From Mytilus edulis (taxonomy: Eukaryota): a DNA stretch of 64,000 bases. Below the pieces are notes generated by a model that saw only the letters and a program-made list of their open reading frames with translations, ran no database searches and was not told the origin of the DNA. The position numbers and the translations under genes are program-made. The stretch is from contig NC_092349.1 of NCBI RefSeq assembly GCF_963676685.1, positions 69,688,001 to 69,752,000 on the forward strand, in the 5' to 3' direction. Position 1 is the first letter of the stretch, and every line of letters begins with the position of its first letter. Shown here in pieces: positions 8,646 through 11,600 of this stretch.

Positions 8646-11600
8646 TTTTTAACAGGATTTTCGAAGGAAAAATCGGTTATTGATTTGGGGATGTACGATG
8701 GGCGGGCGGGCGGCTGCTAAACAGTGTCCGTTCATTAACATCAGGCCTCTACATTAACATTTTTTCTAACTTGTCCCTTCGGACAAGTGGCAAGAAAATC
8801 AACTTGTCCGAACTCTTAACTCACTTGTCCGAATTCATAAATTACTAAGACAGCTTCGTGAAACTGGGCCAAGTTTTATAGATTTTTAAAAGACAATGTA
8901 TAAATGATGACATTTTTTTGGTACAAGTGAGTTGAATTCAATTTCCACTGATTTGGTTATAAAAGGCTAAAGGATAGAATCGTGCATTCTTGATATCAAT
9001 ACATCGATTTTTCATTGTTGACAAATCATGATAATCCGTCAACCTATAAAAATTAAGTTATAAGCAGGAAAAGGAGAATAGATAATTAGACTAGTAATAA
9101 TAAGATAAATTGCAAAATTGATATAATAAATGAGTGTAATTTATATAAATAAACGTATGACTATCCTAAGACCATCATAAAACACCTCTCGTATTGTCCT
9201 AACTTTATGACCAACTTTAAGAGGTGTCCTAATTTAGGACCACTTTGTGAAACCCACTTAGGACTAAGATATGTTGTAAGACCATCCTAAGACAGCTTCG
9301 TGAAACTGCGCCAAGTTTTATAGATTTTTAAAAGACAATGTATAAATGATAAATGGCATTTTGGATTTTTTTTTCTTTTCTTTGGTAAATTGTTTGAAGA
9401 ATTTTGTGGTAGGTTTGTTTGTTATTCTGTATAAACTAATTTTCTGAATGCTATATATATATAAGATAAGATAAGATATTTTATTTTCCAATTATGGGCC
9501 CCAAAGGGCATAAACATTACAACATCAATAATTTTTTCATAATACAATACAAACAATGAGATAAAAAAAAAAAAAAGTTAAACGAGAACTATTTAAGTTC
9601 TTAAAGAATACGTAGATAAAGAATCTATACTAATGCATTTTATTGCAAGTGTGGTTGATATAGATAACAAACAAGCAGCCCAAAAAGAAAAAAAGAAAAA
9701 TAGATATCCACATATGTATAGTACACAAAAAGTTGGATCAATTAAATATATAATAATTAGCCAAAAAGAAAGTAGAAATTAAACATGTCCATGACTCATC
9801 CTGTGTCAGCAGCAAATAGGAAAGCATTATGGTTTCCTAAAGGCAGCTGACACCAGGGGGCGATACCTTATGGGCCATAGGCATGTAAAATGTGTGTAAA
9901 TGTCTATTTCCTACCTGTATCAAAAGCAAACAAGGAAGCATCATAGGTAACTTGAATGCAGTTGATACTAGGGGACGATGCCTCAAGGATATAAGAGAAC
10001 ATTTGAATAAATAATATATCTTAACAATTATTTTTTTTTTTTAATCGGCTAGTATGTTTGTGATATTCAGATGAATATAATTTTCTATGTCCAATCAAAT
10101 GTATATACACACATAGATTTCCTTTAACTAATCTTCACTAAGGAAGATGTTTGTATATAAAATTACATATTATTTTAAGTAACTCAACATTTTCTACACT
10201 AAATAACCAGATAATTTTGCTTTGACTGTTCATATGATTAAAATAAGAATTATATTGTGCAATACTAGCTAACATACAATTTCTATCATCCTCAAATTTG
10301 TTACAATCAAGTAGAAAATGAGCCTCATCTTCGACAGTATTGGAAGAACATTTATTACATATTCTGTTAATTCGGGGAATACCCTGATATCTACCTAATT
10401 CTATTTGTAATCTATGAGAAGATACACGTAATTTAGTAAAACTTCTTCTAAGTTCAAAATTCTTGATCAATGTTAGATATTTTTCAAAACCAAAATTTGT
10501 TTTATATAAAAGGTAGGTTTTCAGTTTACTGTCTGAAAATTTATCTATTTGTTTTTTCCAACAGCTAATAAACAATATTGATAGCTTGGTTTGTATATAT
10601 TTCTTAAATTTGTATAAGGATTCACAAAATGGAGCATTTATGGCATTTGTATAGTCAATACCAAGTATTTTAAAAACAACATTTATTGAACCATACCATG
10701 ATGTTATATTCATGTGATGTAGTGTCTTTGATTGTGTATATGCCTCTTTTAATAGAGGAAAATTATTACCTAAATTCTCTAATCTATACCAGTACAATAA
10801 CATTCCTTTTATAATATTAAAATATATTGGAAATCTTCCAAGTTCAGATAACACTGCAGCATTTGTTGTTTTCTTGTGTACCCCAAGTATAAATTTACAA
10901 AATTTTATATGAAGTTTCTCATAGGGTAAACCTGAATACAATTTTTCAAAAGATATATCTTCCAATATATATATATATATATATCATTTTTTTTTATGAA
11001 GTAAACTCATTTAAAAACTAAGCATATATTGTCTATTGATAAAGATATATTAGATTTCTGATTTTGGGCCCTGTTTTCAAGTTAGTCCATATCGGGGTCC
11101 AAAATTAAACTGTGTTTGATTATAACATAAATTGTATATATATACATTGATATATAGGGTTCTTTGAAACGCTGAATCTAAACCTTTATTTATTTTCATT
11201 ATTAATTAGATAAGACCACATTGAGGTCCAAAGGGTCCTTAATTAAACTTTTGTTTAATTTCATCAAAAATTGAATTCTTCGGGATCTTTGATATGTTGA
11301 TTCTAACAATGTTTTAGTGGTTAAATCATATCTCATTTTAGAGAACTATTTTTGTTGATTACATTCATGGAAATAAGTTTGAGTTATTTCCCTTTGATTA
11401 ATAGATATTGTATTAATGATAAATGACATTTTGGATTTTCTTCTTCTTTTCTTTGGTAAATTGTTTGAAGAATTTGTGGTAGGTTTGCTTTTTATTCTGT
11501 ATAAGCTTATTTTCTGAATGCTATCCATATATTTTTTTGATGAAGCTAACTCCCTTAAAAACTAGTTTATTTTTTCTATTAATAAACATATATTCAGATT

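What the first reader, a model, noticed from the sequence alone, without database searches (positions are those of the whole stretch)
9800..9985. Duplicated structured RNA motif with compensatory changes in the LINE 3' UTR
Seen: two diverged ~71-nt copies, B (9985-9914) and A (9870-9800), on the LINE sense strand. A: UAAGGUAUCGCCC CCU g GUGUCAGC u GC cuu UAGG aaaccauaaugcuuu CCUA uuu GC u GCUGACAC AGG. B: UGAGGCAUCGUCC CCU a GUAUCAA cu GC auu CAAG uuaccuaugaugcuuc CUUG uuu GC uu UUGAUAC AGG. Four base pairs change on both strands (two in the lower stem, two in UAGG/CCUA to CAAG/CUUG), while the bulged purine, GC/GC pairs and U-rich internal loops are kept. The 5' leader also stays complementary to the apical loop with covariation (AAGGUAU/AUGCUUU vs GAGGCAUC/GAUGCUUC). 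This pairing works through G-U pairs on the LINE sense strand. Inference: a selected RNA structure. Candidates are an ENE-like U-rich triple-helix stabiliser, an ORF2 recognition element, or a switch/inter-copy pseudoknot (the ~4-nt linker is too short for a simple intramolecular knot). I could not fit it to hammerhead, HDV-like, twister or pistol cores.
Basis: partly seen in the sequence, partly recalled or inferred. Interest (0 to 1): 0.8.

Follow-up and report, generated by a model that had tools for sequence, protein, structure and literature searches.

The report
Paired folded RNA module in LINE tail
Two neighbouring, long, irregular RNA hairpins just after the last gene of a mussel-type LINE retrotransposon are kept in shape by compensating mutations across several related LINE families, so they form a real RNA element that I could not find described and whose job, probably to dock a protein, is untested.

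Summary
A (9870-9800) and B (9985-9914) are two related hairpins on the minus strand, in the 3' UTR of a young 5'-truncated LINE copy (10963-9461). Of 17 shared pairs, 4 changed on both sides and 1 broke.

Sister LINE families of the same genome give stronger evidence. 24 units from about 8 families keep the fold: 82.7% of cells pair, 14 of 23 pairs changed on both sides, and 0 of 500 shuffles reach the covariation score.

Units come in pairs: tandem, circularly permuted or nested.

- The leader-loop pseudoknot is not conserved.
- ENE and ribozyme readings fail, and Rfam has no match.
- Two sister families lack the module but keep the terminal hairpin, AAUAAA and microsatellite tail. The module is therefore probably not the reverse-transcriptase priming signal.

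Best guess: an accessory protein-docking platform on the sense RNA.

The scan found the same module earlier on other DNA of this genome (note s1-837618). I reached my reading before seeing that note, and the two agree.

The parts
9461..10963 (-). 5'-truncated copy of a high-copy, young LINE family (read from 10963 down to 9461)
   Evidence: other loci match the window from variable upstream ends (10963, 10583, 10353, 10145, 10022 and others) down to a common end at about 9449-9479 in 26 of 29 (three break off earlier); 2210 rough CM candidates in the genome; the 150 scored all reach 88-101 bits.
10138..10965 (-). C-terminal 275 codons of the LINE ORF2 (after the RT domain; ends in a Cys/His motif)
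   Evidence: ORF; 98 homologues, several carrying PF00078; a fuller copy, L067, has RVT_1 upstream in the same frame.
9898..10004 (-). Unit B, whole extended hairpin (weak outer helix P0, bulge, P1, bulged purine, P2, GC box, upper stem, loop)
   Evidence: MFE of the extended stretch. R2 gives 72.6 bits.
9914..9985 (-).
9783..9886 (-). Unit A, whole extended hairpin with an outer helix P0 of about 16 bp
   Evidence: MFE -43.6 kcal/mol. P0 cognate duplex -14.7 kcal/mol, ranked first of 21. R2 gives 78.2 bits.
9800..9870 (-).
9973..9984 (-). 'Leader' of B: a 12-nt one-sided bulge between P0 and P1
   Evidence: It can form a 3-bp mini-hairpin (read by eye).
9858..9869 (-). 'Leader' of A: a 12-nt one-sided bulge between P0 and P1. 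Position 9860 is C in 23 and T in 36 of the other copies
   Evidence: MFE draws a 3-bp mini-hairpin here.
9498..9509 (-). Terminal 4-bp G+C hairpin with a 4-nt loop, shared by all sister families; the likelier reverse-transcriptase recognition hairpin
   Evidence: Seen in own, L074, L077, L080, L087, L082, L084, L086 and L092, with a both-sides change in L077.
9480..9485 (-). AAUAAA signal in the conserved terminal block
9461..9478 (-). Pentanucleotide microsatellite tail (3.6 copies) that ends the LINE
   Evidence: TRF: period 5, 100% matches; common 3' end.

Best explanation
A and B are the two units of a conserved, sense-strand RNA structural module. It sits 13-133 nt after the ORF2 stop codon in one clade of LINEs of this genome (a mussel, according to the scan's earlier notes).

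Each unit is an irregular hairpin of about 105 nt. From the base upward it has:
- an outer helix P0;
- an 11-12 nt bulge on the 5' side, which may form a tiny hairpin;
- a short helix P1 (CCUU/GAGG, with a conserved U.G pair; CCU/AGG in this family);
- one bulged G;
- a freely covarying helix P2;
- a UGCA/UGCA box, P3;
- a variable upper stem, P4.

Shown here: the helices are kept by compensatory change. The module comes as a pair. It tolerates circular permutation and nesting, so what matters is the central helical core, not the loops or the connectivity.

Inferred: the pair is a docking platform for a protein, possibly a dimer, either the element's own or the host's. It decides the fate of the LINE RNA (assembly of the particle in cis as translation ends, or protection or localisation of an mRNA with a long 3' UTR). 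It is an accessory. The priming signal for reverse transcription is more likely the terminal hairpin, AAUAAA and microsatellite block at 9509-9461.
For: **Fold conserved with covariation**
- 9 units aligned by MAFFT: 85.5% of cells paired, 12 of 23 pairs changed on both sides, 0 of 500 shuffles reach any of the five measures, slid controls 31-53% paired.
- 24 units aligned to the model: 82.7% paired, 14 of 23 pairs, covariation 0.363 against 0.151 in shuffles (0 of 500).
- Outer helix P0: cognate duplex -10.65 against non-cognate -5.68 kcal/mol over 21 units.

**Sense strand**
- U.G at the P1 pair in 19 of 24 units. Overall 37 G.U cells against 9 A.C cells.

**Paired, in three topologies**
- Tandem standard units in own, L079/L080/L088, L087 and L176.
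- Tandem permuted units in L076 (z -3.6 and -4.4) and L074 (z -4.1 and -3.6).
- Nested in L077: outer-unit duplex -45.5 kcal/mol, z -5.6, 0 of 300 shuffles.

**Specific to these LINE 3' UTRs**
- A core pattern is found 218 times in the genome against 26 for the reversed control.
- Sampled hits lie downstream of an ORF2 C-terminus in 3 of 12 loci (L176, L177, L183); L184's match lies on the opposite strand downstream of the unit. The other 8 have no match to the own-family ORF; I take them for 5'-truncated copies.

**Not the priming signal**
- L081-L086 (6 loci of 2 families) have 3' UTRs of about 150-200 nt with no model hit at E up to 1. They keep the terminal block that all families share.

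**Not catalogued**
- No Rfam match.
Against: - No protein, binding or function was tested; docking is inference from anatomy only.
- Open frames of ORF2 are of similar length with and without the module (1170-1223 aa against 1176-1186 aa). No extra protein domain goes with it.
- Units within a family are usually each other's closest relatives (3 of 4 families). Part of the resemblance between units may be recent duplication or homogenisation, not long joint selection.
- Alignment A5 is fitted to the model, which inflates pairing.
- In the window itself the antisense strand folds slightly better.
- RNA reads are few, come from both strands and show no defined ends. Expression of the element as its own transcript is not shown.
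- All evidence comes from one genome. 80 more distant LINE relatives from metagenomes (60 of them with at least 200 nt after the projected ORF end) gave no hit.
Confidence: 0.5

Rival explanations
1. The module is the recognition element that the LINE's own ORF2 protein binds to start target-primed reverse transcription, as in stringent-type LINEs.
For: It is a conserved stem-loop in the 3' UTR of a LINE that ends in a microsatellite, which is the setting of stringent-type recognition (abstract of PMC4176376). It is conserved across families.
Against: It lies about 320 nt upstream of the tail, not next to it. Two sister families with long open frames lack it. Every family has a separate conserved hairpin directly before AAUAAA and the tail.
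Confidence: 0.15
2. The long imperfect hairpins are precursors of small RNAs (miRNA- or siRNA-like) cut out of LINE transcripts.
For: Each unit has about 35-40 bp of interrupted helix. The arms above the bulge are about 22 nt. Units come in tandem like a miRNA cluster.
Against: No miRNA family matches A or B; the only miRNA row, mir-297 at E 7, lies at 10055-10118, outside both, and none in the six sister loci at E up to 1. Circular permutation moves the loop to the other end yet keeps the same core sequence, which a measuring nuclease would not tolerate. A conserved 11-12 nt bulge sits where a cut would fall. No pile-up of read ends was seen, but depth was low and no small-RNA library was laid.
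Confidence: 0.08
3. There is no function: a palindromic stretch was duplicated, drifts neutrally, and looks conserved because the families are related.
For: Units within a family are close relatives. Related sequences can beat column shuffles without any structure (caveat stated in the output). Some families carry half units or rearranged units.
Against: P2 and P0 have entirely different sequences in different families yet stay complementary. 12-14 of 23 pairs changed on both sides. Slid controls, which keep relatedness, fall to 30-53% paired. Bulges and internal loops are kept, which arm-to-arm DNA copying would erase. The families concerned have near-identical copies and long open frames.
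Confidence: 0.07
4. It is a conformational switch or pseudoknot. Either the leader pairs with the apical loop, or the 3' arm of B pairs with the 5' arm of A to make a central permuted unit.
For: B's leader and loop form a -13.6 kcal/mol duplex. All four compensated pairs differ in the direction that lets B's 3' arm pair with A's 5' arm through G.U (read; chance 1 in 16). Inner cross-pairing beats outer in own and L080-type families.
Against: Leader-loop: cognate -4.20 against non-cognate -4.11 kcal/mol. The central segment of the window folds no better than shuffles (z -0.24). The inner/outer cross-pairing trend is absent in L087 and reversed in L176/L175.
Confidence: 0.08
5. It is a self-cleaving ribozyme or an ENE-type triple-helix stabiliser.
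For: Natural circular permutation is typical of small ribozymes (recalled). The internal loops in A and B are U-rich.
Against: No Rfam family matches A or B at E up to 10 in the window region, and none at E up to 1 in six sister loci. Copies are continuous across the element and keep the tail needed for copying. No read ends or joints were seen (low depth). In sister families the loops are 2-3 nt and not U-rich.
Confidence: 0.03

Closest known systems
3' tail stem-loop of stringent-type LINEs (zebrafish ZfL2-1/ZfL2-2; eel UnaL2 recalled)
   Same: A conserved RNA stem-loop in the 3' UTR of a LINE that ends in short tandem repeats. It is recognised as RNA on the sense strand (abstract of PMC4176376).
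   Different: That stem-loop is short and sits directly before the tail. Here that place is taken by a separate hairpin at 9509-9498. The module is about 2 x 105 nt, lies near the stop codon, comes in pairs, can be permuted, and is missing from two sister families.
Conserved 3' UTR stem-loop proposed for human L1 and Alu (PMC5135761; search listing and start of abstract only)
   Same: A structured element in a LINE 3' UTR, proposed to act in retrotransposition.
   Different: Different LINE clade with a poly(A) tail. I made no sequence or fold comparison.
RNA localisation stem-loops of Drosophila I factor and gurken, bound by Egalitarian-BicD (recalled; PMC13186709 and PMC3964905 seen only as search listing)
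   Same: A LINE RNA carries a stem-loop of tens of nucleotides that docks a host protein. Recognition is by shape more than by sequence.
   Different: Those signals are single hairpins, and that of the I factor lies in the coding region (recalled). No sequence likeness was tested, and no localisation data exist here.
RNA stability element after the gag stop codon of Rous sarcoma virus (recalled from memory, no call)
   Same: A cis element placed directly after a stop codon of a retroelement RNA with a long downstream region. Here the families with the module have 3' UTRs of about 550-680 nt and those without it about 150-200 nt.
   Different: No likeness in sequence or fold was tested. That element is pyrimidine-rich rather than a defined hairpin pair (recalled).
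Conserved central domains of mollusc SINEs (Vhc stem-loop, MESC, Nin-DC/Snail; PMC4758252, abstract and part 1 of sections 9 and 11 read)
   Same: Conserved, hairpin-forming modules shuffled among bivalve retroposons. Vhc_1 SINE tails match oyster CR1 LINE 3' ends.
   Different: Those are SINE bodies. The paper's text gives no sequences and its supplements were closed, so identity with this module could be neither shown nor excluded.

Membership tests
Stringent-type LINE 3' tail recognition stem-loop | Stem-loop lies directly upstream of the terminal tandem repeats | tested here: not met
   A ends at 9800 and the tail starts at 9478. A different hairpin (9509-9498) holds that place.
Stringent-type LINE 3' tail recognition stem-loop | Present in all active relatives that share the tail type | tested here: not met
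   No model hit at E up to 1 in L081-L086 (6 loci, 2 families). Their relatives have open frames of 1176-1186 aa.
Stringent-type LINE 3' tail recognition stem-loop | Bound specifically by the cognate ORF2 protein | not testable with these tools
   Needs a binding or retrotransposition assay.
ENE / triple-helix stabiliser | U-rich internal loop of several U on both strands, flanked by stems, that clamps an A-rich 3' tract | tested here: not met
   The loops flanking the box are 2-3 nt per side and are not U-rich in sister families. No Rfam hit.
Small self-cleaving ribozymes (hammerhead, twister, pistol, hatchet, HDV-like, hairpin) | Match to the family's covariance model or conserved core | tested here: not met
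   Rfam 15: nothing over A or B at E up to 10 in 9500-10300. Nothing at E up to 1 in six sister loci.
Small self-cleaving ribozymes (hammerhead, twister, pistol, hatchet, HDV-like, hairpin) | RNA ends at a defined cleavage site | tested here: inconclusive
   No places where many molecules begin or end, and no joints, but depth was only 1-12 reads.
H-type pseudoknot (leader with apical loop) | The two strands stay complementary in relatives | tested here: not met
   Cognate -4.20 against non-cognate -4.11 kcal/mol over 24 units. Permuted units lack the loop.
pre-miRNA / pri-miRNA hairpin | Match to a known miRNA family; small RNAs with defined ends | tested here: inconclusive
   No miRNA family over A or B. 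No small-RNA library was laid.
SINE central domains of molluscs (Vhc, MESC, Nin-DC) | Sequence identity to the domain consensus | not testable with these tools
The text of PMC4758252 gives none, and supplements were closed.

The most novel reading that the evidence does not exclude
The pair is a topology-independent docking module for a host RNA-binding protein. A LINE clade places it right after its stop codon to shield or route an mRNA with a long 3' UTR, as protection from nonsense-mediated decay or as germline localisation. That would be the first element of this kind in a non-LTR retrotransposon outside Drosophila, and a rare natural circular permutation of a non-catalytic RNA.
Probability: 0.2. 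Interest if true: 0.75.

Novelty: new variant of a known kind. Interest (0 to 1): 0.6.

Why it matters
How LINEs that end in microsatellites choose, protect and package their own RNA is poorly known outside a few vertebrate and insect models. Here one genome offers a natural experiment:
- several active sister families with the module in three topologies;
- two families without it;
- all families sharing one terminal hairpin.

That separates the likely priming signal from an accessory element and gives ready-made mutants for testing. A covariance model of the module would also improve annotation of bivalve repeats. It would keep thousands of structured hairpins from being mistaken for miRNA or ribozyme candidates.

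Tried and rejected
1. **Leader/apical-loop pseudoknot.** Duplex energies of cognate and non-cognate leader-loop pairs do not differ. Rejected as a conserved feature.

2. **Central alternative fold (3' arm of B with 5' arm of A).** The segment folds no better than shuffles (z -0.24), and the inner/outer cross-pairing trend is inconsistent across families. Rejected.

3. **ENE and ribozymes.** See the membership tests.

4. **Relatives outside this genome.**
- 80 metagenome loci with more distant relatives (25-49% identity) gave no R1 hit at E up to 1, and one R2 hit at E 2.2, taken as chance. 60 of the 80 have at least 200 nt after the projected ORF end.
- A loose home-made scan for the two core halves hit 43 of 160 locus-strands on both strands alike. 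It is uninformative noise.

5. **RNA evidence.** Four RNA runs hold the LINE, but depth is low, both strands are read, and there are no defined ends or joints. This shows neither an own transcript nor any processing.

6. **Age of the duplication.** A tree of the 24 units puts the two units of a family together in own, L080-type and L176-type families, but not in L087. Whether the pair is old or was remade repeatedly stays open.

7. **LINE clade.** Only RVT_1 was found. Calling it CR1/L2-like rests on the tail type and on recall, and was not tested. The full-length element could not be fetched.

8. **Uninformative loci.** L073 loses likeness to L074 9 nt after the stop. L090-L092 are broken or rearranged copies. 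I count none of them for or against.

9. **Mini-hairpin in the bulge.** 2-3 bp in one of two registers is possible in most units (read by eye). With such short helices this is only suggestive.

10. **Literature.** Searches for a description of the module found none. Supplements of PMC4758252 were closed and may hold SINE consensus sequences that bear on novelty.
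Full report
**What is at the site**

- A folds at -28.2 kcal/mol (z -4.97; 0 of 200 shuffles as good). B folds at -18.1 kcal/mol (z -2.22; 7 of 200).
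- The plus strand folds at least as well (-32.0 and -20.0). The main stems of this window alone therefore do not tell the strand.
- A and B align over 76 columns.
- 9 of 34 paired and 13 of 42 unpaired positions differ. Four double hits among nine changes has P about 0.0012 under independence. This is a post-hoc figure for one pair of sequences.

**Context**

- The hairpins lie 152 nt downstream of the stop of a 275-aa ORF (10965-10138, minus strand).
- That ORF has 98 homologues at E up to 1e-5, several with a reverse-transcriptase domain. In a fuller copy (L067) it continues an ORF with RVT_1 (E 1.8e-32).
- 29 other loci match the window from variable upstream ends down to a common end near 9461 (three break off earlier).
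- There the element stops with 3.6 copies of a pentanucleotide, preceded by a small G+C hairpin (9509-9498) and AAUAAA (9485-9480).

This is a 5'-truncated copy of a LINE with a 3' UTR of about 677 nt. The family is young and abundant:
- the 40 scored DNA matches are 99-100% identical over 231 nt;
- a model of A and B finds 2210 rough candidates, and the 150 scored all reach 88-101 bits.

Among 59 other loci (52 distinct places), this copy differs privately at 9969 and 9906. Position 9860 is C in 23 and T in 36. Position 9969 is the 'bulged a' of B, and every other copy has G there.

**Relatives**

Copies of the own family are too alike to test covariation. I therefore searched the genome with a foreign homologue, P0001. 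This showed at least eight sister LINE families at 42-52% identity to it, many with open frames of 1170-1223 aa. I fetched 20 of their 3' UTRs.

The model of A and B alone already found the motif in L087, L088, L077/L078, L079/L080 and L074, twice in L079/L080, L087 and L088.
- A MAFFT alignment of 9 units with a 23-pair structure gives 85.5% of cells paired and 12 of 23 pairs changed on both sides. 0 of 500 shuffles reach any of the five measures, and slid controls give 31-53% paired.
- A core pattern occurs 218 times in the genome against 26 for the reversed control. It showed further variants.
- I fetched 12 loci for these variants. All 12 have model hits. Three (L176, L177, L183) have an ORF2 C-terminus upstream of the unit; L184's match is on the opposite strand downstream. 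The other eight have no match to the own-family ORF, and I take them for truncated copies.
- 24 units aligned to the second model give 82.7% paired, 14 of 23 pairs changed on both sides (1 of 500 shuffles) and a covariation score of 0.363 against 0.151 (0 of 500). This alignment is fitted to the model and leans towards it.

**Anatomy**

Folding the units with their flanks shows that each is about 105 nt long.
- An outer helix P0 of 5-17 bp has a quite different sequence in each family, yet cognate strands pair far better than non-cognate ones (-10.65 against -5.68 kcal/mol, 21 units).
- Next comes an 11-12 nt bulge on the 5' strand only. Its sequence is partly conserved, and it can form a 2-3 bp mini-hairpin (read by eye; weak evidence).
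- Then follow P1 (CCUU/GAGG; CCU/AGG in the own family), a bulged G, P2 (6-8 bp, the most variable and best compensated helix), a small internal loop, a UGCA/UGCA box (only its GC core in the own family), another small loop, a variable upper stem and the loop.
- The closing pair of P1 is U.G in 19 of 24 units and U-A in 5. Over all pairs there are 37 G.U cells against 9 A.C cells. This favours the LINE sense strand, though 19 of the 37 come from that one pair.

**Topology**

- In own, L079/L080/L088, L087 and L176 there are two standard units in tandem.
- In L076 (the same stretch was found in copies L075 and L089) and in L074, the 3' half comes first and the 5' half second. P0 is closed by a short loop and the upper end is open. 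These are circularly permuted units, two in tandem, and each folds as such (z -3.6 and -4.4; z -4.1 and -3.6).
- In L077 one standard unit is enclosed by a permuted one. The permuted unit's halves lie about 260 nt apart and pair at -45.5 kcal/mol (shuffles -23.3 +/- 4.0; 0 of 300 as good), with the 12-nt bulge in place.

So the helices and the bulge are kept, but the connectivity is not.

**What it is not**

- Rfam 15 has no match at gathering score in the window. Nothing lies over A or B at E up to 10, and nothing at E up to 1 in six sister loci.
- The leader/apical-loop pairing is strong only in B (-13.6 kcal/mol). Over 24 units, cognate and non-cognate pairs do not differ (-4.20 against -4.11; loop alone -1.52 against -1.25). 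Permuted units have no apical loop.
- The internal loops are too short for an ENE and are not U-rich in the sister families.
- A central alternative fold between B and A is not supported.

**Function**

- L081-L086 (two families, six loci) have 3' UTRs of only about 150-200 nt and no model hit at E up to 1.
- Every family that could be read to its end shares the terminal block: a hairpin (with one pair changed on both sides in L077), a conserved stretch with AAUAAA, then a family-specific microsatellite. This covers own, L074, L077, L080, L087, L082, L084, L086 and L092.
- By position this block matches the tail stem-loop that ORF2 recognises in stringent-type LINEs (abstract of PMC4176376). 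I therefore take it, and not A and B, as the likely priming signal.
- The module always begins 13-133 nt after the stop codon (read). It goes with long 3' UTRs (about 550-680 nt).
- ORF2 open frames are equally long with and without it.

I infer an accessory docking platform for a protein, own or host, that acts on the RNA's fate. This step is not shown.

**Other data**

- Near-identical sequence is held by 20 listed runs from 15 studies, under three coded organism labels and several metagenome labels.
- Four RNA runs laid on 9200-11200 show low depth on both strands, one long-read contig over 9646-10957, and no joints or preferred ends.
- 80 distant LINE relatives from metagenomes gave no hit.
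- A tree of units groups the two units of a family together in three of four families.

**Earlier notes of the scan**

After I had reached the reading above, a word search showed note s1-837618 on another piece of this genome. It describes the same module, 'usually present twice and in either of two circular orders', as undescribed and probably protein-docking. My results agree with it. It is not independent evidence.

**Literature**

Four searches found no description of this module. PMC4758252 (abstract, and part 1 of sections 9 and 11) describes conserved hairpin-forming SINE domains in bivalves but prints no sequences. Its supplements were closed, so a link to those domains stays open.

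**Verdict**

This is a new, uncatalogued variant of a known kind: a structured cis element in a LINE 3' UTR. It is unusual for its paired state and its natural circular permutation. Its function is untested.

Noticed in passing
window 9969 and 9906: Two private substitutions of this LINE copy. All 59 other loci examined have G (minus strand) at both places. 9969 is the otherwise universal bulged G of unit B.
   Followed up: yes
window 9328-9462 and 11398-11532: A stretch of about 135 bp directly beyond the LINE's 3' end recurs at about 90% identity some 435 bp beyond its 5' end. RNA reads pile up at 9334-9467, with poly(T)/poly(A) loose ends at 9366 and 9383. This is probably another repeat into which the LINE inserted.
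   Followed up: no
window 9873-9911: The spacer between B and A gives a weak match to the Rfam family IBV_D-RNA on both strands (E 0.2 and 1.2). I take it as chance. Its 3' arm is the start of A's outer helix.
   Followed up: partly
window 9492-9500 and 9870-9878: The same 9-mer occurs in the terminal block after the hairpin and in the outer helix of unit A. It is not seen in the sister families printed, so it is probably coincidence.
   Followed up: partly
My gathering-score Rfam search of the whole window gave no match.
   Followed up: no
window 11094-11121: Very high word depth in two metatranscriptome runs (2023 and 77) over a stretch of about 28 nt outside the LINE. It may be a fragment of an abundant RNA or a low-complexity word.
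   Followed up: no
L141:464-786: In one metagenome LINE relative, a core-like 5' half lies between two core-like 3' halves inside the ORF2 match. It came from a noisy scan and is likely chance.
   Followed up: no
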